A stretch of DNA of 42,420 nucleotides, taken from NCBI RefSeq assembly GCF_001194135.2, contig NC_068983.1, positions 76,407,224 through 76,449,643 on the forward strand. Reading direction: 5' to 3'. Positions within the stretch are counted from its first letter, which is position 1; the number at the start of each line of letters is the position of its first letter. Both the position numbers and the translations under genes were made by a program. This DNA comes from Octopus bimaculoides. Taxonomy: Eukaryota. Shown one piece after another: positions 47 to 42,420 of the stretch. The notes below the pieces were generated by a model that saw only the letters and a program-made list of their open reading frames with translations, was not told where the DNA came from and ran no database searches.

Positions 47-2040
47 ACAAAAGAATACTAAAGTTCACCAGGAGAAACCAAAGAAACCGAAGGTGAAGAC
101 ATGTCTAGAGGAGGGCAACAACAGCAAATTCAAGCAGGAGAAACAAATGAAGACAAAGGTATCTGCGCACCGCCGAGCTGAGAATGGATGTGGGTCCAAG
201 GTGGATTTACAGGAAAACGAAATAGAACCTTCAAAGGCATATGGCTCTGATAGAAAGGGCACCAAACCAGTCTGCAAGGTCTATGTAAAGGTTATGTACT
301 GGCATGGTGACATTAGGACAGGCTGCAGATTTGCTCATCCCAAATGCCCTGTGAACAGTACTCATTCAACTTGCGCGAAGACCAGGAAGAACAACCTCCA
401 TCGATGTAGAGTCAGATCACATGATGTAATGCCACCACCATGGAATTGTATGGATGGTGCACGCACAATTTTCAGGAGGAAACAAACTGTGGAAGCAGTG
501 CAGATAGCGGCTACTGAACAACAGACTTTTTGGGAGGTTGCACAGAAGATTGGAAGGTATCTGAGATGGCTTCACCAGTCACTCAATATGAGGAACACTT
601 ATCGCGACCACCTCAAACAGCAGATGTTCGAGGGTGGCCACCTCTCACACCTCTGCAAATATTAGACTAGTGGCAACTACCAATCTCTACATGTCACACC
701 AATATTCTTGCAGAACATCAGTGGCCTCGTAACATCCCAACAACGCAAACACAGTACTTGTGAGACTTAGTAACATGTAACCAAGCAATATGCGTGTCAC
801 TAACAGAAGCACAGCTAAACCGAGACATATCAGATGAGATACACATACCACGGTATGTTGTGTTTCGAATTGACAGGAGAGAAACAAGTCATGGTGGAAT
901 GGCAATGTACATCTGAGAAGATGTACCTTCTCTCCAGTATATCACTGCACGGCTTGAGACATGCAGAATCTCTCCTTGACCTCATTGACATGCTCTTTAT
1001 GAATCAAATAATGCTCCATGCACGAAGGGGAAAATATCCTGGACCTCAGCTTCACAAACAATGCAGTGTTAATCCATAATGTTAAGGTGACACCGATGAT
1101 TTTCTAGGACCATAACTTAATAGAGATAAAAATATATGGTCCGCAGAAGACTACAGACATGTAGGCTTCTAGAAGGACCCAACTGCTCTCCAGCCTCAAC
1201 TTTCACAAAGGTGATTGGAAGGGCACCGTGAAAGAGACCATGGAAGAAAACTGGTCTGCCAGTCTCTCTGTGCAAAGTATTGACATAAAGCTACAACACA
1301 TTATGACAATCATGCATGACATATGCAGTAAGTTTGCTTCAGAGAAAATACCAATCCAGCAGAAAGATATATTACCCTGGGATAAGAGGATTCTAATGAG
1401 ACGACCAGCAAAAATCACAAATCGTTTAAATAGGCCACTAAAGAATAACAAACAATTCTATCTCAAACAAACATTGCTCGAGATCGAAAATGAACTCAGA
1501 TACTCTCATGAAAAGGGGAGGGCAGAAAAGGAAGCCAGAGCTGTCAAAAATATTAAGAGAAACCTTAAAGCCTTCCATAGATATTCAAATGAGTCTGCTT
1601 CAGTACGGTACAAAATAGGGCCACTATTTGAAGAAAATGGCTCACCGACTGCTGACCCGGAGGATCAGTGAAATAGTCAATGAGCAATACGAGAGTGCTT
1701 TCACCACTCCATTGGGACACTTGTAATGAGCTATGCCTGATGAGTTCTTTGGCTACAAAGCTCTACACAACAAAATCCTAAAGAACGCCTTGCCAAAACA
1801 TCTGAGAGATCTCCATAGAGTAGAGGTAGATGTTTTCAAGTAACAATTTCACGGCTTGCTACCCAAGATCCCAGATGAACCAATATCAAAGCAAAACATT
1901 CAAAACCGGGCAGAAGTGTCATATTTCGACCTTCACCAAAAGCCAATCACATAGAATTGGCCAGTTAAAATGTGATTACATTGGCGGTGCCTTAACATGG
2001 CCAAAGCCTCAAGGCTGAAACATATGAAAGAATAAAAGAG
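41..2040 (+). mobile_element. Degenerate CR1-group non-LTR retrotransposon with internal deletion of the RT domain
   Basis: ORF1 remnant with CCCH-like finger; APE motifs (IFLQNISGL, VSLTEAQL, RIDRRETSHGGMAMYI, DLSFTNN, DHNLI) with stops and frameshifts; EN-RT linker (IKRNLKAFHRY...IGPL...EQYESAFT) joined at about 1785 directly to the ORF2 C-terminus (LPKHLRDLHRVEVDVFK...KIPDEP); 3' tail GGCGGTGCC...GAAAGAATAAAAG. Clade assignment from motif recall. Confidence 0.85.
93..665 (+). pseudogene. LINE ORF1 remnant with degenerate CCCH zinc finger
   Basis: CKVYVKVMYWHGDIRTGCRFAH at 273-338 = C-x7-(Y, TAC likely from TGC)-x8-C-x3-H; aligns with the finger of the second copy at 33465-33530. Confidence 0.6.

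Positions 2041-3011: not shown

Positions 3012-3058
<47 letters not shown>
3012..3058. repeat. (CA)n microsatellite
   Basis: Direct reading. Confidence 0.95.
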
Positions 3059-3062
<4 letters not shown>

Positions 3063-4271
3063 TATATATGTATATGGTTGTGCTGCATTTCCATTTTGTT
3101 AATCTTGTAGTATTAATGGCGTCAAGGATACGCTAGCGCTGCTCTTGAGATGCTTATATTAAACTGTAGTTAAGGTAGGAGAGTAATTAAAGTAGTAGGG
3201 GAATTGAACTCTTGGCAGATAAAGTAATATTGAATGTGTGTATGATTAGGTATTTCCCACCGTGTTCTGATTGCGTACACAGAAACACACTCACATATAG
3301 TAACGTATGTATATATGCATTCTAGACATAGCGTGCCTTACAATTTTATATATAATTTAGTTTTTGCAAACACGGCATCAATATTGTTACAATATAGCTA
3401 AAATACAACTATATAAATATGTATGTTTTTATACATTTTAATATAGTTTAGAACAACACAATCTATTCTAGTACATATTAATATAGATATCTATTCGAAA
3501 TCTATTTTCCTATCTACTAGTATTTTGTAATATCTTTTAGGATATTTACATTAATATATACAAGCGCAGACTACATTCTTTTCATAGTATTTAAATATAT
3601 AACTTCATAAATAAATATATTGCTTTATTATGTCTGAATCATTCTATACGGAGCAAATCTCTTGCTATATCGGTTTTAAAAATCAAAAATATACAACAGT
3701 GGATGTAATATATTATATAACTAGAACTTTTAATAATTCACTTTAAGTATTTGTTTTGCAAGATTCTTGATATGAAAATGTGTGTTGAAACAGATATTGT
3801 AATATTTGGGCATGACCATTTTGCCAATAAACACACGCATTATTTGTTCAGCTGTCTGTTGCATCATGTCTGGACATAAGGTTAGAGAGAAGAAAAGATA
3901 TAGAGAAAAAGATCACAGTCATTGAAGAGGTTAAGAATGTGCGAAGAAAGAACTCGGACAAATAAACTTTATCTAATAACAAATCTCAAGAAAATTTTTT
4001 TTTAAATAGTGGCAAAATGACTGTCACCACATACAGCAATATTGGCTATTTCCTTTAATGAAACTTTCCTGACTTTCTAATGGTGTTGTTTAATACGTGG
4101 GAGATTGAAATTACAATCCACTTGCTTGTATTTTCCCGTCCATTTTCTTGAATTGTATACCAGAAATAGACACCTTATTTCGTCTTCTGCAGCAAAGTTT
4201 TCGCGTCTACAAACATACCATTGATGAAAAAGAAAACAAACAAATGAAGAGAGTGAGAGAGAGTGAATGAG

Positions 4272-9720: not shown

Positions 9721-12344
9721 TGAGCATATTTACATTTCGATAGAGGTCTCTAAAAAAAGATGGCTTATCATCAAATTTTAAAGGAAGAAATTGTTTTAAT
9801 TATTTTGTAAACAGTGGGCTTCGAAACGTTTGTTAGTCTATCCTAATGTCTGAAGTTTACTACAGACTTGCTATTTAGATATCAATTGACATCTTGTCGA
9901 ATAATTTTCTTGTGTTGACAATCTATTCTATTAGAAGAGGAGTGATAGGCATTAACAAAATAGGAAATAACAATAGGCATTCCCCCTGAGAAGAAAATGA
10001 TAAAATAATATTTGAATGCACGAAAACAAAATTAATAATTGATGAAATTTCAGATAAAACTAAAAATAAAATGCTCAATTCGTAAATTCGTTTGTAGAGG
10101 CAGTTATCATTTCAAACTTGTAGACGCAAAAGCTATAATCAAAATTTTATGTAAATAGATAATTTAAAATATAATAGCAAATATTCTATACAAAGTGTCT
10201 GAAGAAAAAGCTCTAATATCATTCAACATCTTGGGAGATTTCCGTTTATTGGACTGGCGTCAGCTTTCCACACTTAGTTATAGAAGAGAAACGCAAAGTG
10301 CCTATGCGCTGCCAAAAATACATCAGATTTTCGTATTCTTACCAAGAAGGAGTTTGAAACAGCCCCGGTAGACACTACATGACTACAGAACAAGACCAGA
10401 TTTGTAACCTGTATTGAGTGTTGACTCGAGGAACTTAAAATTAGGAATTCAAGGTACATAAACCATCTTTTACTCATGTGGGAGAAAATCTTATTCAGAA
10501 TCTTTTTGCGAAGAGAAAGTGTAACAAATACTATAAAAAAAAAAATAAAAGCCATATAGAACTAACGCTGCTCACACAAGTGCCTATAGCTATAAAAAGT
10601 ACAATATGGAAAATATATAGGAAACTAAATCAGGAATATTAGGTATCCTAATCAACACAAGTAGACATTCTAAACTACATTTTATTTTATTTTATTCCGT
10701 TCTGTTAGGTATTGTATAATGCCCTTCGCCCCTCACCTTCATAGAAATTATCTGTTGCATCCTACAGGCCTTTGAAAACTTCGTGTTTAAAATTTCATTA
10801 TACATTTAGGTTCTCTACATAACCCTGTGTCTACTAAAGTGTTATTTTATTATAATTATTTGCGCAGTGTTGTGTCATGTCTCCAGGCATCTGTTCTTTC
10901 TCTTCACGATATAATTTAATTACAGTATGACCTAGCAATGCTCAGGCACTAAAAAAAAATTACTCTTTTCTATATTCTTCATATATATGAATACTAATTT
11001 CAAATGAATTATTTCTAAGTGAATTAATTTTAATGAGCCATTTTTTTTTTTGTCTTCAGAGTATGGTTTCCCCTTTTTGTACAAAATCTGTCGGTAAAAT
11101 ATATTTGCATCATAGAGAGATACAACAATTAGGATGCCGTAGTGATATTTATCGCCATGTTAACACACATTGCGCAGACTTGTAACCGAAAGTTTTCCCA
11201 GATTTCATTATCTCACCTGCTCCCTTTCAGGCATAGTACACTTTGGAAAATATTAGCCAATATATTTTCACATTTTAAAGTTTGTCATCGGCCGTCATCT
11301 TCATTCTTTCAACTAGAACGAAAGCGGACGTAATCATTCCCCACGCACTCGATCCTTCATATCAATTACGGTCGCAGGTTTAGGTAATTATTCTTGGTAA
11401 TCAAGAATGGGGCCACTGCGCTGAATTTGGCCTATTTTAAGCGTTGCTCGATGGCGACTATGAAATTTGTTGCTGTAAGTACAAGTATTTTCACCAGCTC
11501 TTGAGGATAACTGTGTATATTGAGTTGCTTAAACCGTAGCAACGCTTGTCTGTCAGATAATTTGTTTCACTTTTCTTTCAGTTTCAAAGTTTCTGCATAT
11601 ATCTTCGATGTTGCACTATATCCAGTGACGAAGTCATAATAAAAATCAAGCAACTTCGCAAAGGTTTCCTTGTGTGTTCAAAACACGAATTTATTGAGAA
11701 GAGGAATAAAACCTAAAAAATGTAATTACAAATCTGGGTAGATATTTCTTGAAGTGACGCAACGTAAAGCAAAATGTGTATAACATGCACTATTTGCTAC
11801 TCTCATTGGTAGGGACTTGACAGCCATCTAAATGTTTTAAATACTGTGATCCTATGAGATACTTTTAAAATGCGAAATAAATATTTGCAATTGATGTAGA
11901 AACAACTCAAGAGCTGCTGGGAATGTTAAGGTGACTTTAAATATAAATGTAAACGTATTTCAGAAGAATGTATAGAAAAACGAAAATGCTTTTGCTACCA
12001 TGTCCATTGCGTAGACTACGTGGAAACTATCCGACACAAAAAAATTGAGCTCAAAATATAATTTTATATCGTCTTAAGTGCCTTTCCTTTGCGTACAAGA
12101 GCAGCCACTACTCTTCAGAACTTAGTGATCTTCTATTATCTCCGCTCAAGTGTTCTTCGATCACTCATCTACTCTCCAGTTATCAACTGAAATGTGGCCA
12201 CCACATCAAGATCTGCAATAGTCCCTATACACAATTTCCTATAAATTCTTCGAGTATTGTTCTACTGAAGGATATTTTTCCAACAACCATTGGCGTGCAA
12301 TCATTCAAGCGTAACGTTAACTACATCAATTAGCTCAGTCTCAG

Positions 12345-12874
12345 CAGTTTGTCATGTGGTACCGAAACATCGTAGCGATTTGGGTACCCAAACTTTTCCA
12401 GGTGTTCATGGACGACGGATTTCGATAGGTTTAGGCTTTCTGCCAATTCTCGGTTTGTGTAATGTGGTATATTCTCAATTAATGACTTGATTTGGTCATC
12501 ATCTGTAGTGGATGGTGTGCCTGATCGCTCTTTATCAATAAGGCTACAATCTCCAGCTCGGAAACTTGCGAACCACTTCCGTACAGTTCTTTCGGATAAA
12601 GAAACATCACCATAAACTGCACATATTTCTTTGGTTGCTTGTGAGGCATTTTTCCCTTTACGGAAAAAGAAAAGCATCAAGTGCCGAAAATGAACTTTCT
12701 TATCTTCCATTTTAAAGGGTTACAAAATTAACACAAGTTATAGGAACATAAACCTTCTTCCACGAAAAGATAGCTTAAAGTGTGCTCCAAATGGAGGTGT
12801 AGTCAAATCCTATTTTCTGGACTCAACCATGCTCTAAAATAAGTCGAAAGGCAACAACTTTCCGGACAACCCAA
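12345..12874 (-). mobile_element. Mariner 5' fragment (mellifera-like TIR and N-terminal HTH); catalytic domain absent
   Basis: Minus strand TA+TTGGGTTGTCCGGAAAGTT; ORF 12330-12710 MEDKKVHFRHLMLFFFRKGKNASQATKEICAVYG...RKWFASFRAGD...RSG.P...SVPH (degenerate WVPHEL); homology ends at about 12345; second TIR not found. Confidence 0.9.
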
Positions 12875-28552: not shown

Positions 28553-29383
28553 TGCAGAGCTATGTTGAAAAATGACTAATGCTAATTGGTCGCCATTATC
28601 TCTTCCGTACTGAATTAAAATTTCATACATCTATTTGTAAAAATAAGGGTGTTATTAAATAGTAAGCCTCCTCAGCAATTTCTGGGCTATATTTTGAGAA
28701 GAACCGATGAACAAATACCTAAATTATTACATATAAATGTTTTTGGCTTTAAAACAAAAAAAAAAAGAAAAACTTTTTCCGCACTAATGCATTCCATGTT
28801 CCTTTTCAGACTTGCTTCTTCTTCATTCTTGTTATTACTTCAATTATTTTCCCTTTTTTTTTTATAATCTATTAAACTTCACTTTCAAATGCATGTCTGT
28901 GTATATATGTATATGATATGCAGACCAAAAGCGCACTTGAAATCACGATAGTCTACAAACAGTTTAAACGAACTTCTTATAACAGTCTATTTTACTTTCA
29001 TCTTCATAAATTTCAGCCGGTTAGCGTGACATACCTTAATTTATATCAATATTATGTTAACGCGAGACAAATAAGAGCCTACCAACTCGAGATCACCACT
29101 CGTTAAGCGGAAAACTATATTTTGTCATTTATATTGGTTGTCATCAAATACCTCGGTTCTGAAGGGCAAGGTAAGGATGATAACACAAAGAAAGTAAGTG
29201 CTTCATTAAAACGGTTATTTTCAACTGGCTACACTATCAAATACCATCACTGAGCAGAATGCGCTTCCAATAATGTTCACTTTACACTTCTCTTCTGTTG
29301 GGTCCGAAATGTTGATTAACATATTTCTGTATGTTTGTGGAGAAAAGAAATCCCCACATGCACACACACACACACACACACAC

Positions 29384-29748
29384 NNNNNNNNNNNNNNNNN
29401 NNNNNNNNNNNNNNNNNNNNNNNNNNNNNNNNNNNNNNNNNNNNNNNNNNNNNNNNNNNNNNNNNNNNNNNNNNNNNNNNNNNNNNNNNNNNNNNNNNNN
29501 NNNNNNNNNNNNNNNNNNNNNNNNNNNNNNNNNNNNNNNNNNNNNNNNNNNNNNNNNNNNNNNNNNNNNNNNNNNNNNNNNNNNNNNNNNNNNNNNNNNN
29601 NNNNNNNNNNNNNNNNNNNNNNNNNNNNNNNNNNNNNNNNNNNNNNNNNNNNNNNNNNNNNNNNNNNNNNNNNNNNNNNNNNNNNNNNNNNNNNNNNNNN
29701 NNNNNNNNNNNNNNNNNNNNNNNNNNNNNNNNNNNNNNNNNNNNNNNN
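29384..29748. other. Assembly gap (N run)
   Basis: Flanked by (CA)n and (TA)n. Confidence 1.
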
Positions 29749-30416
29749 TATATATATATATATATATATATATATGCATATTAATGCACTTACTCATACG
29801 TGTTCCAATTCTGGCTATAATTTACTTAATGTATACACATATCAGCTATAAGAAACATTTACACTCTGCTGGAAACTACATTTTCACAGCTTGAGACCGA
29901 CATGATTCAATGAGTTGCTATTCAATAAACAAATGCTTTGTTCTCATTTAACAAATACCATTTTATAACTAAACAGGTATATAATTTATGTTATTGAATT
30001 TTCTTCATACTTTTTTCATGACGAACATAATATTGTTGTTGATGATGACAACGGGTATGAAAATTATATCTTTATGGTAATGATGTCGTGAGGCATAGAT
30101 CAGTTGTGATTGATGTTGCTGTGTATTATTATATTAACTTACTGGTTTCAGTCAAGTAGCAGTAAATATGCTGACGCACTGCCTTCATAGGTTTTTAGTA
30201 CTAATTTCAATGTTACGGTTTCTCAATAGCATTCTGCTGCGTGGGTAGTTGGTCGTTTAAGAGAAATTGACACATGGTGAGATGCTGTTCGGCGTATGCA
30301 TATAGAAACATGCACACGCGAGTACACAAACACCTACGCTCAAGCACATTCAATACATGTAAGCAAATCAATCATACGAACACTCACTGACACTCACTTA
30401 TACATACGTGGTTACA

Positions 30417-32566: not shown

Positions 32567-32618
<52 letters not shown>

Positions 32619-32624
32619 GTATAT

Positions 32625-32812
32625 AGTCTTTTATTTTTTACTTGATCCCGAGATTAGACCGGTGTCTTGGACAATTTTTAGTCGAATGAACTGACTCCAA
32701 TACCTAATTTCGTTTTCGTGCTAAGCCTGGTACTTATTCTATCAGTATCTGTTTTCGATCACATACATTACGGTGGCGTAAATATATCAGCACTTATTGT
32801 CATTGCCAAGGG
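32625..32812 (-). mobile_element. OR-type SINE 3' portion, degenerate, running into a gap
   Basis: TTTTACTTG...TTTAGTCGAATGAACTGAC...AAGCCTGGTACTTATTCTATC is the reverse complement of the 27600-27730 segment. Confidence 0.6.
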
Positions 32813-38691: not shown

Positions 38692-38739
<48 letters not shown>

Positions 38740-38978
38740 CTGTATTTTCCGCCATAGGAGGTGACGTAGAAGAGAGTGTAAACATTCAAACTTCACCATT
38801 ATATTTCCAAGTTCAGCTGCATTTCACATGGAATATTTAATCCTCGAAAGTTGACCTTGTGTGTAAGTCAACCTATGTCAGTTGAAATCCTTTGCCTAAT
38901 TTCTCTGTAAAACCGAGCACAATATTTGTCGTGCATTATATCAGACCAAACGCATTCGAAGTAATATTTCAGCTGACA
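38740..38978 (+). repeat. Left 239-bp inverted arm (TIR-like, pogo/Tc2-like terminus)
   Basis: TA|CTGTATTTTCCGCCATAGGAGG...CAGCTGACA; gapless match to the reverse complement of 41787-42025, 20 mismatches in 239 by hand alignment. Confidence 0.95.
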
Positions 38979-39335
38979 CCACTACACAAACGAATCACCA
39001 CAGCATATAATTTACAAATACACATCTAAATGAACATCATAAATTCTGTTCCTCTCACTACTCCTCTATCCAACGATGAAGGTTGAATGTGGTCGCCTTG
39101 ACAACATACAAGTTCTCTTATTGAAACCTAAATGCTTCAAATCTCGCCCCATTGTCTTACAGACAGAAATTCAAAGGGCAAAACTGTAGTCCCATATACA
39201 TCCTAAACCTATATTTAATATCATGGTTGGAGCGTTTTGATCACTCTACTCATAAATGTCATCCTGGAAATAAACAACGATTACAGCAACGCTTGACAAG
39301 AATCGTCTCTTTTTTTTATCTTTCAACCATCATTA

Positions 39336-40231
39336 CGAGATGCGTTCAAAATGTATCAGATTTCCTTTCCCCGCCAAAACTAATGCTACGTGGTCAAAAT
39401 TGTTTGGGTGGGAGATGACAACACCCTTTCTGTGCATGCGTGGTAAGCTGCCACAAATCTCGGCTATTACGCGTAATGTACAGACGTGAAGTGCGCCTGC
39501 GTCAGATTTTCTTTCACACCGAACGAACCGAATAGAGATGTTCCATCAGTTTTTTTGCCAAAAGCTGGTTTATACTCAAGCTCAAACTATCTAGAAGATT
39601 CGGCAGGCTTTTTACGACGATGCTTGGGTAAAATCACATCAAGGTGTGGTACAACCACTTCAAATATGGTTGCTCCTCAGTGGAAAGCGCAGTACGCTTA
39701 TACAACTTGCATGCACAAGCGGAAACGAGGAGCCGATAGAGAATATGCGGTGAATAGTCATGGAAGGCCCTCGTGTAACAATCCTCCAAGAAATTACTCA
39801 GAAAGTGGAAATACGCAAAGGATCAGTGCATTTCCATTTTAACAGAGGATTTGTGGATCCAGAGAGTGTCGCCGAAATTCGTCTCCAAAGTGCTAATAAA
39901 CCAATGGAAGCTACTCTGTATGGAAATCGTTTAGGACATGCTGGACTGTGCAAACTACCATCCGGACTACATGAGGAGCACCATCACTGGTAATGAGACT
40001 TATGGACTCTGCTCAATATGTTCTGATACCTTCCACGTAAAGGAAACTCTGACAACCGTGCAGAACACGTCTGTAATCTAGGCACAACAGTGGGGATCTC
40101 ATGTGGCCTACCGGCGCGAAGGTTTTCAAGCGTTTCAAGGAAGGCTGGCGTCACCTCCCACTCAAAAGAGTTTGTGCATGCGGCATTAGTTTTATCTTGA
40201 AAATATTCGGATACATTTTTAAACGCTTTCA
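39336..40231 (+). mobile_element. Mariner (irritans-like), internally deleted, both TIRs present
   Basis: TA|CGAGATGCGTTCAAAATGTATCAGA and reverse complement of right end TA|TGAAAGCGTTTAAAAATGTATCCGA; frameshifted peptides FCQKLVYTQAQT, VWYNHFKYG, PKFVSKVL, DMLDCANYHPDYMRSTITGNET. Confidence 0.85.
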
Positions 40232-40686
40232 TATAAAGCTTTAATTATCTTATTATCTCGTAAATTAGTAAAATATACACGCACCTTACCATTTGTTTCT
40301 ACACCAATATAATACAGTGCTATTTTGGTTAGTGAAACGTTTTAGTCAAAACAAAATACCCTAGTCCCGCTCATTGTGTCCCTGTAACATTAAAATATTC
40401 TACTACTATAATTTTTATGTTTACGAGAACAAAATGAACTTTGTAGATAAAATAGTTTATCTTTCAATAATACTTCTCTAAGAAACGTTGCTTAAAGCTA
40501 ATATTGATGTTTTTCAGCTGAGATAAGGAATATAACTGCGGCACTGAATAAATGTATTCTTACAAGCAAAGTTTAATTTTATTCTTCTGATATTTATATT
40601 GCTTGTCATAGAAATTTCCATTCTGCATGATTCTAATATGATTTTTACTTTGATTAATGAGGTAAATACTAGTAAAATAATGAATA

Positions 40687-41786
40687 TATTTCAAGGTCGG
40701 CTGAAAAGTTCATAAGCTGACCCAGATACACGCATGGAATGTCCCCAATTAAAGTTTAAGTTTTCAACATAGTCCTTTTAGCGGACGACGCACATCTTCT
40801 TTCAGCGTTGTAAGACTTGGATGAGATTGGTGAAGAAGCTTTTATACTGTTGGCAAAAACATTCATCAACAGCAGTTGCGATGGCTTCATCACTACGATA
40901 GTGGTCCCCAGCGAAATGATTTTTCTTGTTGGGGAACTGATGATAGTCAGACAGGGCCAAATGAGGCGAATGGGGAGGATAATCAACCAGTTGAAATCTA
41001 CAGTCACACATAGCAGCCATTGAAACCTTGGACTTGTGTCCTGGAGCATTTTCCTGGGCGTTTGGAATTAATAGACTTTCATAACTTATCGCGTTGGCAC
41101 AGTACTCTCCGTTGATAGTATGGTCTCTTTAAGGATAATCAAGGAATACAATGCCCTTTGCATTCCCCAAAATGGAGGCCATCACCTTTCCTATAGATGA
41201 AACTTTGGAGCAGGATTGTGTCTGGATTGTGTCTGGCCCAGAGCGATGAATCCAGCTCTTGTCTTGGGCGAAGAAAACGTTCAAGAAAACTAGCTGATTA
41301 GAAAACAAATCATAATGTGATTAGCCTAGGGCTCTTCTTCTGATTGCTTGTCATACAAATTTCTTGGCGATTAGCCTAGTGCTCTTTTGCTCGGGTGTCA
41401 GCAGGACCTTCGTCATTCCACGCTCATTGTACAGAATATTCAACTCTCTCACGGGATATGCTGATAGCATTGCCTTTTTGATTTATAGACAATGGTCCGT
41501 TATCCATCACCATGTTGTGAACACGGTCAGTGTTTACTTCCGTGGTGACAGTTGCAGGACATCTGGACTCGGGTCATCTTCAAAATTTTTCTCGTCCTCT
41601 CTTAAATCCAGCTTCCCACTTTTGCACTGTTTGCATAATTGAATCTTCATCACTTAATGTAGCTACCATGTCAGTACGAATATTGCTGGTGTTAAAACAG
41701 TTTCTGAAGGTACTCGATTACACCACGATGGAAAGTTTTCTTTGTTTTCAAGAGAAGTCGCTACTAATTACATTTGAATTCTACTT
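40687..41786 (-). mobile_element. Mariner (irritans/Hsmar2-like), decayed, 5' end cut off
   Basis: FQLVDYPPHSPHLALSDYHQFPNKKNHFAG..YRSDE (YSPDLAP-like), GKVMASI.WGMQRA, NFEDDPS, HRGVIEY; one TIR GGTCGGCTGAAAAGTTCATAAGCTGAC at 40694-40720; 5' end abuts the right 239-bp arm. Confidence 0.9.
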
Positions 41787-42025
41787 TGTCAGCTGAAATA
41801 TTACTTCGAATGAGTTTGGTCTGATATAAATCGAGACAAATATTCTGCTCGTCTTTACAGAGAAATTAGGTGAAGGATTTCAACTGACATAGGTTGACTT
41901 ACACACAAAGACAACTTTCGAGGATTAAATATTCCATGTGAAATGCAGTTGAATTTCGAAATATAATGGTGATGTTTGAATGCTTACACTCTCTTCTACG
42001 TCACCTTCTATGCCGTAAAATACAG
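41787..42025 (-). repeat. Right 239-bp inverted arm
   Basis: Reverse complement of 38740-38978; followed by TA and (TA)n. Confidence 0.95.
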
Positions 42026-42049
42026 TATATATATATATATATATATATA

Positions 42050-42420
42050 CCCACAATAACCACTAAGTTAAAGTTAGAATTATGGTCTAATACAGACCAA
42101 GTAATTAATTGGTTTAGATCAATTGAACATAAAGAAGAAACAAAATTTATCCAATTTGATATAGCTAACTTTTATAGATCAATTAACCCAATAGTACTAA
42201 ACAAGGCAATGTGGTTCTTCCATAAAAAAGCAGGCCTCACTAAAGAAGAATTTAAAGTTATAACAGCAGCAAGGAAATCGTTTATTAGCTTTAAGGATAA
42301 GATATGGGTAAGGAAAGATACCCCTGGAGCATTTGATGTTGCCATGGGAAGTTCCGACTCAGCTCAAATAGCTGATATGGTGGGATCATTTATCCTCTAT
42401 GAATTAAATGATCAATTCCC
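42050..42420 (+). mobile_element. Penelope-like element RT fragment, open to the window edge
   Basis: About 123 uninterrupted codons: LWSNTDQVINWFRSIEHK..KFIQFDIANFYRSI...ARKSF...WVRK...FDVAMGSSDSAQIADMVGSFIL; PLE RT motifs A and B'; 5'-truncated at (TA)n. Confidence 0.85.

What the first reader, a model, noticed from the sequence alone, without database searches (positions are those of the whole stretch)
38740..42025. Candidate Pack-type composite transposon: 239-bp inverted arms around 2.8 kb of apparently captured older DNA
Seen: gapless arms with 219/239 identity, identical inner breakpoints (...CAGCTGACA), TA on both outer sides within (TA)n, and an interior of AT-rich DNA plus two convergent mariner relics full of frameshifts. 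The right arm cuts the second mariner just upstream of its ORF, removing its 5' TIR. From recall, the terminus CTGTATTTT.CG.CATA resembles pogo/Tc2-type TIRs. Established: cargo-carrying TIR elements (Pack-MULEs and similar) are well known in plants and less documented in animals. Inference: arms look younger than the cargo, so a long-TIR or fold-back element captured a genomic segment, possibly at its fragile palindrome centre, and may move as a unit.
Basis: partly seen in the sequence, partly recalled or inferred. Interest (0 to 1): 0.7.

Follow-up and report, generated by a model that had tools for sequence, protein, structure and literature searches.

The report
Inverted 239-bp repeats bracketing dead mariners
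Two 239-base inverted copies of one repeat bracket 2.8 kb of junk DNA inside a TA microsatellite of an invertebrate-type genome; this looks like one decayed cut-and-paste transposon copy carrying foreign filler, an ordinary kind of thing, but two separate insertions of the same repeat cannot be excluded without the rest of the genome.

Summary
Arms 38740-38978 and 41787-42025 are gapless inverted copies, 219/239 identical, and homology stops exactly at their inner ends and at the flanking microsatellites. The 3,286-bp unit sits between (CA)16(TA)6 and (TA)12. The interior holds 357 bp of non-coding DNA, an internally deleted mariner (A) with its own ends and TA duplication, 457 bp of AT-rich DNA, and a near full-length dead mariner (B) whose 5' inverted repeat and most of its 5' UTR are missing at the right arm.

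New here: each arm carries three copies of TTCARCTG, and the arm's inner end is the end of a 13-nt inverted repeat. The right flank is a 5'-truncated Penelope-like retroelement, a class reported to prefer (TA)n.

"Identical inner breakpoints" is a tautology, the pogo/Tc2 resemblance is not borne out (terminus CTGTA, not CAGT), and "younger arms" is weak. No other copy could be found in any collection I could search, so copy number, donor locus and empty site remain untested.

Best reading (about 0.4): one non-autonomous inverted-repeat DNA transposon copy with foreign filler. Rivals are two solo (TA)n-tailed units, a Penelope-style double-primed retro-insertion, and a local inverted duplication. 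Interest is low.

The parts
38695..38739 (.). Left flank: compound microsatellite (CA)16.5(TA)6, the presumed target array
   Evidence: the same (CA)n(TA)m polarity occurs at about 3012, 29361/29749 and 32572
38740..38978 (+). Left arm, 239 bp; outer terminus CTGTATTTTCCGCC, inner end ...ATTTCAGCTGACA
   Evidence: 219/239 to the right arm, no gaps; found nowhere else in the window
38812..38819 (+). Motif copy 1 in the left arm (TTCAGCTG)
   Evidence: 6 of the 15 window matches lie in the two arms, against about 0.05 expected per arm
38876..38888 (+). Motif copy 2 (TGTCAGTTGAAAT), inverted partner of the arm's inner end
38966..38978 (+). Motif copy 3 (ATTTCAGCTGACA), which forms the exact inner boundary of the arm
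   Evidence: 47 of 200,000 shuffles and 0.6% of real 239-mers of the window show such a boundary repeat
38979..39335 (.). Interior segment 1: non-coding, no family match; the first 60 nt are unusually A+C-rich (top 1% of the window)
39336..40231 (+). Mariner relic A: internally deleted, own imperfect inverted ends of 110-130 bp, TA on both sides, only part of the N-terminal coding region left (1 stop, 2 frameshifts in 85 codons)
   Evidence: (I2)
40232..40688 (.). Interior segment 2: AT-rich (27% GC), non-coding
40689..41786 (-). Mariner relic B: nearly whole transposase reading frame (aa 3-344 of 345; 6 stops, 6 frameshifts), 3' inverted repeat kept at 40689-40720, 5' inverted repeat and most of the 5' UTR absent
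   Evidence: (Transposase_1)
41787..42025 (-). Right arm, 239 bp, reverse complement of the left arm; motif copies at 41787-41799, 41877-41889 and 41946-41953
42026..42049 (.). Right flank: (TA)12
42050..42420 (+). Context: 5'-truncated Penelope-like retroelement. Its reading frame is open from the microsatellite edge to the end of the window and matches residues about 220-350 of 600-900-aa proteins that end in a GIY-YIG-like motif

Best explanation
The 3,286-bp stretch is one decayed copy of a non-autonomous, terminal-inverted-repeat (cut-and-paste) DNA transposon. Its two 239-bp arms are the only parts belonging to the element itself. Each arm has a short terminus (CTGTATTTT...) followed by three copies of an 8-13-nt motif (TTCARCTG(A)CA) in mixed orientation, which are inferred to be transposase-binding sites. 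The innermost motif marks where the functional arm ends. The element inserted into the (TA) part of a native (CA)n(TA)n microsatellite, splitting it into (TA)6 and (TA)12. The 2.8 kb between the arms is foreign filler: older genomic DNA that already contained the dead mariners A and B. It was probably acquired when a break between the arms (the centre of a near-palindromic 478-bp element) or an excision gap was repaired by copying or ligating other DNA. One edge of the filler cuts mariner B 41 bp before its start codon. The other edge lies in a CA-rich tract that offers microhomology to the arm's terminal ...ACA. Published base rates make filling in place after insertion more likely than movement of the whole composite. 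Shown: the anatomy, the flanks, the motifs and the truncation of B. Inferred: the transposon nature of the arms, the role of the motifs, and the filling mechanism and its timing.
For: The inverted arms are gapless at 219/239 and homology ends sharply on both sides. Both outer ends abut TA within (TA)n, while the inner flanks are CC and TT, so a single insertion into one array is the most economical reading. Native (CA)n(TA)m arrays of the same polarity lie elsewhere in the window. Each arm has three TTCARCTG copies, 6 of the 15 in the window. The arm's inner boundary coincides with the end of a 13-nt inverted repeat, seen in only 47 of 200,000 shuffles. Mariner B lacks its 5' inverted repeat exactly at the junction, while A is a complete nested element with a TA duplication. 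B shows 6 stops, against about 2 expected at the arms' level of decay (my own estimate; supplies only the count of 6). The structure fits the break-and-fill model of Pack-TIR formation, including microhomology at breakpoints and internal breaks (PMC8277862).
Against: No second copy of the arm, no autonomous partner and no empty site could be found or even searched for. The terminus CTGTA is not the CAGT/CAGG/YYAGGT of known TA-targeting families. The two ends of a single arm are not inverted repeats of each other. The duplication length cannot be read in (TA)n. No donor copy of the filler lies in the 38.7 kb upstream, although more than half of published cases have a donor within 15 kb. The A+C-rich start of the interior, next to (CA)16 on the other side of the left arm, is a 1% coincidence that hints the left arm could be a solo insertion into a CA tract. 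A (TA)n-seeking retroelement sits right beside the right arm.
Confidence: 0.4

Rival explanations
1. Two independent insertions of one 239-bp non-inverted-repeat element (read 5'-TGTCAGCTGAAAT...AAAATACAG-3'). The element either carries a (TA)n tail or is primed on (TA)n, like a short retroposon. The interior is native DNA. The left copy landed in a CA-rich tract. The right copy landed in the 5' UTR of mariner B, and the Penelope-like element later entered the right copy's (TA)12, pushing the rest of B out of the window.
For: (TA)n lies at the same end of both units and never at the other end. A single unit has no inverted repeat between its own ends. Both units start at the same nucleotide, which is also the end of a 13-nt stem. 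The sequence next to the left unit's other end is in the top 1% for A+C, continuing the (CA)16 beyond the unit. (TA)6 is a normal native length after (CA)n. 8.4% divergence is typical of two members of a family. The window has one microsatellite per 1-2 kb, and a (TA)n-seeking Penelope-like element is adjacent.
Against: It needs two same-family hits 2.8 kb apart in the one tails-outward orientation, while the other 39 kb of the window hold none. There is no tRNA, 5S or 7SL head, ribozyme or any Rfam match. No clean target duplication is seen around either unit. The left flank is exactly a native (CA)n(TA)n array, so a 'tail' is not needed. Three dispersed copies of a motif with a palindromic core are more typical of transposase-binding ends.
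Confidence: 0.25
2. A Penelope-style retro-insertion at a break in the (TA)n array, in which both DNA ends primed reverse transcription. One product is a short copy of the 239-nt unit (the right arm). The other is a 3-kb copy of a read-through RNA that began in the 5' UTR of mariner B at a source locus, ran through B and the DNA downstream of it, and ended at a 239-nt unit there (5' transduction). This gives inverted repeats around the whole insert.
For: [quoted passage not shown] Such an element abuts the right (TA)12. Both outer junctions are the same end of the unit joined to (TA)n. Mariner B is cut 41 bp before its start codon, a plausible transcription start, and B is in sense orientation relative to the left unit.
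Against: The arms show no reverse transcriptase, GIY-YIG or hammerhead signal and no similarity to the part of the neighbouring element that lies in the window. Its 3' end, which this model predicts the arms resemble, lies outside the window and could not be compared. The 30-40-bp 'tail' extension described for this class was not looked for. The model needs a source locus and a non-autonomous partner that nobody has seen.
Confidence: 0.12
3. A local inverted duplication: replication or repair switched templates at the hairpin-prone (TA)n array and copied the adjacent 239 bp in reverse 2.8 kb away, deleting the 5' end of mariner B. On this reading the 239 bp is not a mobile family at all.
For: One boundary of the homology lies in a self-complementary (TA)n and the other at a short inverted repeat; both are known to favour template switching (established knowledge). 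The arm has no other copy in the window or in any collection searched.
Against: It needs two coordinated junctions (arm to B, and (TA)n to the Penelope-like element). It does not explain three motif copies per arm, nor why the outer ends sit as a clean split of a single array.
Confidence: 0.12
4. A larger long-inverted-repeat transposon whose own interior was invaded by mariners A and B and then partly deleted, so nothing was 'captured'.
For: A has a clean TA duplication, as a nested insertion would. Because the homology boundary is set by pairwise comparison, a deletion reaching into the right arm would look the same (reasoning).
Against: B appears more decayed than the arms (weak). The boundary coincides with a motif end, which a random deletion would not. 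No transposase remnant other than the mariners lies in the interior.
Confidence: 0.08

Closest known systems
Pack-TIR elements of animals (Tan et al. 2021, Nat Commun 12:4280, PMC8277862)
   Same: Two ends of one inverted-repeat element enclose 100-5,000 bp of unrelated DNA. TA flanks occur, as in the 115 Tc1/mariner-associated cases. The break-and-fill origin with microhomology would fit.
   Different: Those cases need an annotated consensus element and a unique donor copy at 90% identity or better; neither is available here. The cargo here is about 70% dead mariner rather than host or gene sequence. No donor lies in the 38.7 kb upstream.
Long-inverted-repeat Tc1-like elements (IR-DR group: Sleeping Beauty, Minos, S, Paris)
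   Same: Inverted repeats of about 230-255 bp, a TA target, and internal protein-binding repeats within each arm (from established knowledge).
   Different: Their binding sites are direct repeats at the outer and inner ends of each arm, and the termini begin CAGT or similar. Here the motif copies are in mixed orientation, none lies at the terminus, the terminus is CTGTA, and there is no matching transposase gene.
Penelope-like element insertions (Craig et al. 2021, MBE 38:5005, PMC8557442)
   Same: The (TA)n target; inverted repeats flanking the whole insert, made of the same element end; a genuine member lies next door.
   Different: No reverse transcriptase, endonuclease or ribozyme lies in or between the arms; the interior is mariner debris.
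Inverted pairs of short interspersed repeats (e.g. inverted Alu pairs)
   Same: Two diverged copies of a short repeat in opposite orientation a few kb apart, each with a simple-repeat tail at one end.
   Different: No polymerase III head, no clear target duplications, and both 'tails' read as the two halves of one native microsatellite.

Membership tests
Pack-TIR (criteria of Tan et al. 2021) | Both flanking pieces cover the termini of one consensus TIR element | not testable with these tools
   No repeat library or source genome was available. The arm has no other copy in the window or in the collections scanned.
Pack-TIR (criteria of Tan et al. 2021) | Internal sequence of 100-5,000 bp | tested here: met
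   2,808 bp between the arms.
Pack-TIR (criteria of Tan et al. 2021) | Unique parental copy of the internal sequence (90% identity or better) elsewhere, not flanked by the same element | tested here: inconclusive
   None in the 42-kb window; the rest of the genome is unavailable.
Pack-TIR (criteria of Tan et al. 2021) | Cargo is non-transposon host sequence | tested here: not met
   About 1,990 of 2,808 bp are mariner relics A and B. The rest has no coding or family signal.
Tc1/mariner/pogo superfamily, non-autonomous member | TA target-site duplication | tested here: inconclusive
   TA lies on both sides, but inside (TA)n any even length from 2 to 12 bp fits, including the 8 bp of hAT.
Tc1/mariner/pogo superfamily, non-autonomous member | Termini of the CAGT/CAGG (Tc1, pogo) or YYAGGT (mariner) type, shared with an autonomous element | tested here: not met
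   The terminus is CTGTATTTT. It does not match the ends of mariners A or B. The inner-end likeness to B's inverted repeat is 10/11 with p about 0.03. The consensus termini come from my own knowledge.
IR-DR Tc1-like elements | Direct repeats at the outer and inner ends of each long inverted repeat | tested here: not met
   Motif copies lie at arm positions 73-80 (+), 140-147 (-) and 229-236 (+), with none at the terminus.
Foldback elements | Arms built of tandem sub-repeats | tested here: not met
   No tandem or direct repeats in the arms.
Composite transposon in the bacterial sense (two complete elements around cargo) | Each arm is a complete element with its own inverted ends and its own target duplication | tested here: not met
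   The outer end CTGTATTTT and the inner end TGTCAGCTG (reverse complement) are unrelated. The inner flanks are CC and TT, not TA.
SINE | Head derived from tRNA, 5S or 7SL with a polymerase III promoter | tested here: not met
   ARAGORN found none. Rfam at E<=1 gave no relevant match.
SINE | Simple-repeat tail at one end and a target duplication around a single unit | tested here: inconclusive
   (TA)n lies at the CAG end of both units. CA-rich sequence lies on both sides of the left unit. No clean duplication is seen.
Penelope-like element insertion | Reverse transcriptase plus GIY-YIG coding, or a hammerhead ribozyme, in the unit | tested here: not met
   None in the arms or the interior. 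Only the neighbour at 42050+ qualifies.
Penelope-like element insertion | (TA)n target with an inverted 5'-truncated copy forming flanking inverted repeats | tested here: inconclusive
   The geometry matches, but the arms cannot be compared with the element's 3' end, which lies outside the window.

The most novel reading that the evidence does not exclude
The unit is a retro-insertion made by Penelope-like machinery at a (TA)n break. Both DNA ends primed cDNA synthesis, one on a 239-nt non-autonomous RNA and the other on a 3-kb read-through transcript that started at a mariner's own promoter. This would be a documented case of 5' transduction of host or transposon DNA by a Penelope-dependent element, producing a structure that mimics a long-inverted-repeat DNA transposon.
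Probability: 0.1. Interest if true: 0.5.

Novelty: new member of a known kind. Interest (0 to 1): 0.2.

Why it matters
If the leading reading is right, this is one more non-autonomous inverted-repeat element with foreign filler. Hundreds of these are already catalogued in animals, and here the cargo is dead transposons, so no new gene or principle follows. Its modest value is as a worked example. A clean pair of inverted arms with TA on both outer sides can arise by at least four routes, and in a microsatellite-rich genome that hosts (TA)n-seeking retroelements, flank evidence alone cannot separate them. The motif architecture of the arms would help define a new family once the genome is searched.

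Tried and rejected
1. Six-frame translations of both arms against the 5.8-billion-protein collection gave no hit.
2. Arm patterns were scanned in JGI metagenomes, GTDB genomes and IMG/VR. Nothing related was found. The palindromic motif-pair pattern hit two unrelated perfect hairpins, L001 and L002.
3. I tried to reach the source genome by exact look-up of 11 window reading frames. None is on record.
4. The homologue search with mariner B returned one fish SETMAR-like protein at 45% identity. It served as a ruler only.
5. The word-indexed search with the Penelope-like fragment found nothing. The exhaustive search found 1,569 relatives, but their DNA could not be fetched.
6. An 'empty site by paralogy' test failed: the 220 residues upstream in the Penelope-like protein are not encoded left of the unit or anywhere in the window, so the flanks are not two halves of one element.
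7. No tRNA, ribozyme or other RNA family lies in the arms. The SCARNA7 and mir-297 hits are microsatellite artefacts below threshold.
8. The arm as a single strand does not fold better than shuffles (z = -0.17).
9. The likeness of the arm's inner end to mariner B's inverted repeat is 10/11, p about 0.03, so I treat it as chance.
10. A full-text search of the literature for the terminal sequences gave only chance primer matches.
11. An assembly palindrome is rejected because the arms differ at 20 sites.
12. Helitron, solo-LTR and DIRS readings are rejected on termini and flanks, by inspection.
Full report
**Observation.** The window is a draft eukaryotic assembly with runs of N. It is about 35% GC and extremely rich in microsatellites. 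The reported inverted repeat is real.
- Arms 38740-38978 and 41787-42025 align without gaps at 219/239, with 9 transitions, 11 transversions and no indel. The Kimura distance is about 0.089.
- The repeat finder extends the pair to 252 nt only because (TA)n is self-complementary.
- Beyond the inner ends (400 bp each) and beyond the microsatellites (300 bp each), inverted similarity equals that of shuffled controls.
- The arm occurs nowhere else in the 42 kb.
- With 20 differences, an assembly palindrome is excluded.

**Anatomy.**
- Left flank: (CA)16.5(TA)6, at 38695-38739.
- Right flank: (TA)12, at 42026-42049.
- Segment 1 (38979-39335): no coding or family signal. Its first 20-60 nt are in the top 1% of the window for A+C.
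- Mariner A (about 39336-40231, + strand): TA on both sides and imperfect inverted ends of 110-130 bp. Only part of the N-terminal region aligns to the reference (aa 41-125; 85 codons, 1 stop, 2 frameshifts). By eye the frame continues to an ITGNETY motif. It is an internally deleted but otherwise complete insertion.
- Segment 2 (40232-40688): 27% GC.
- Mariner B (about 40689-41786, - strand): aligns to residues 3-344 of a 345-aa SETMAR-like transposase, with 6 in-frame stops, 6 frameshifts and several codon-level gaps. It matches Pfam Transposase_1.
- B keeps a 3' inverted repeat that matches the Himar1 end, as I recall it, at 15 of 20 positions. Its start codon would be at about 41745, only 41 bp from the right arm, and those 41 bp bear no likeness to its 3' repeat.
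By analogy with 1.3-kb mariners, roughly 100-160 bp are missing (inference).

**New features of the arms.**
- Each arm contains three copies of TTCARCTG, at arm positions 73-80 (+), 140-147 (-) and 229-236 (+). These six are 6 of the 15 matches in the whole window, where 3.5 are expected by chance.
- The two inner copies extend to a 13-nt inverted repeat: TGTCAGTTGAAAT and ATTTCAGCTGACA, 77 nt apart. The second forms the exact inner boundary of the arm.
- An arm ending in an inverted copy of an internal 13-mer arose in 47 of 200,000 shuffles and in 0.6% of real 239-mers of the window.
- This matters because 'identical inner breakpoints' is otherwise a tautology: pairwise homology always ends at the same place in both copies. 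The motif shows that the boundary is a structural one.
- The two ends of one arm are not inverted repeats of each other. There are no direct or tandem sub-repeats. The single strand does not fold unusually well.

**Context.**
- Immediately right of (TA)12 a reading frame is open to the end of the window.
- An exhaustive profile search found 1,569 relatives. In the 600-900-aa members the match begins near residue 220-260.
- Two members I read end in a GIY-YIG-like motif. By my reading of the motifs (FDIxxFY, AMGS), this is a 5'-truncated Penelope-like retroelement.
- The upstream 220 residues are not encoded anywhere in the window. The unit therefore does not interrupt that element, and an empty site cannot be rebuilt from paralogues.
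- Penelope-like elements are reported to prefer (TA)n. They often carry an inverted 5'-truncated copy, so that inverted repeats flank the whole insert (PMC8557442).
- Compound (CA)n(TA)m arrays of the same polarity occur at about 3012, 29361/29749 and 32572. The left flank is therefore a native motif.

**Search for other copies.**
- Six-frame arm translations found no protein.
- Exact-pattern scans of JGI metagenomes, GTDB genomes and IMG/VR found nothing related.
- Eleven window reading frames are not on record, so no further DNA of this genome could be fetched.
- A full-text search of papers for the termini gave only chance primer hits.
- Copy number, donor locus, autonomous partner and empty site are therefore all open.

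**Weighing the models.**

*A single inverted-repeat DNA element with foreign filler (about 0.4)* explains the most with one insertion.
- One native array is split into (TA)6 and (TA)12.
- The inner flanks are not TA, which rules out two solo TA-duplicating elements.
- The arms carry repeated motifs like transposase-binding sites, and the arm ends at the last motif.
- The cargo edges are arbitrary: one lies in B, the other in a CA tract that offers microhomology to the arm's ...ACA.
- In animals, Pack-TIRs arise mostly by repair of breaks inside a resident element. The rate is about 2 per 10,000 TIR elements, and only 1.4% are multicopy. If this is such a case, filling in place is more likely than movement of the composite.
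- Against it: the terminus CTGTA is unlike the known TA-targeting families. The duplication length cannot be read. No donor lies upstream. The cargo is mostly transposon debris.

*Two independent hits by a one-ended, (TA)n-tailed 239-bp repeat (about 0.25)* would account for three things.
- (TA)n lies only at the CAG end of each unit.
- Both units share the same 5' end.
- The CA-rich sequence continues across the left unit.
- The model predicts that the missing 5' end of B lies beyond the Penelope-like element, outside the window.
- It requires a same-family pair 2.8 kb apart in the one tails-outward orientation, with no other copy in 39 kb. The unit also has no polymerase III head.

*A Penelope-style double-primed retro-insertion carrying a read-through transcript from B's promoter (about 0.12)* fits the geometry and neatly explains why B starts 41 bp before its ATG. 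Nothing in the arms points to a retroelement.

*A template-switch inverted duplication at the (TA)n (about 0.12)* and *a larger element with nested mariners and a deletion (about 0.08)* remain possible.

**On age.** At the arms' decay of about 4.4% per arm, I would expect about 2 stops and about 5 indels in B's 1,035 bp. The alignment shows 6 stops and 6 frameshifts. That leans towards an older B. But mariners commonly insert already defective, and inverted arms can homogenise each other, so the argument is weak.

**Comparison and verdict.** The closest known kinds are:
- animal Pack-TIRs (same architecture; membership criteria untestable or, for the cargo type, not met);
- long-inverted-repeat Tc1-like elements (similar arm length; the motif layout and the terminus differ);
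- Penelope-type inverted insertions;
- ordinary inverted pairs of short repeats.

None of these readings would be a new principle. I rate novelty as 'new member of a known kind' at best, and interest as low.

Noticed in passing
window 42050-42420 (+), running off the window end: A 5'-truncated Penelope-like retroelement abuts (TA)12. It has 1,569 relatives at E<=1e-3. The 600-900-aa members carry a C-terminal GIY-YIG-like motif, yet three full-length relatives gave no Pfam match (at E<=0.01), and the one tried against solved structures (P0008) gave no match either.
   Followed up: partly
window 12330-12710 (-): An intact 126-aa reading frame with the Mos1-type HTH_48 domain (E = 9e-22): the N-terminus of a third mariner from a different family than A and B. 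The rest of that element was not examined.
   Followed up: partly
whole window; e.g. 3012-3075, 29361-29775, 32572-32625, 38695-38739: Microsatellite density is very high (54 tandem-repeat rows in 42 kb). There is a recurrent compound (CA)n(TA)m motif of fixed polarity, and several assembly gaps sit inside (TA)n or (CA)n arrays.
   Followed up: partly
window 39322-39450 and 40120-40245: Mariner relic A has unusually long (110-130 bp, about 72% identical) imperfect inverted ends around an internally deleted body. This suggests a long-inverted-repeat or MITE-like mariner derivative.
   Followed up: partly
window 41213-41236 and 41320-41385: Inside mariner B there is an 11-bp tandem duplication (GGATTGTGTCT x2.2) and a nearby duplicated 'gattagcctag.gctctt' segment. 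These are small slippage-type duplications that add to its frameshifts.
   Followed up: no
window 93-665 and 1228-1671 (+): Two reading frames of 190 and 147 aa lie in the GC-richer first 2 kb, with no Pfam match. The second looks to me like the linker region of a non-LTR retrotransposon protein, but this is unverified.
   Followed up: partly
L001 1058-1158 (JAAUYH010151702.1): A high-GC bacterial-looking contig ends in a long perfect palindrome that folds coding sequence back on itself. It is probably an assembly artefact and is unrelated to the finding.
   Followed up: no
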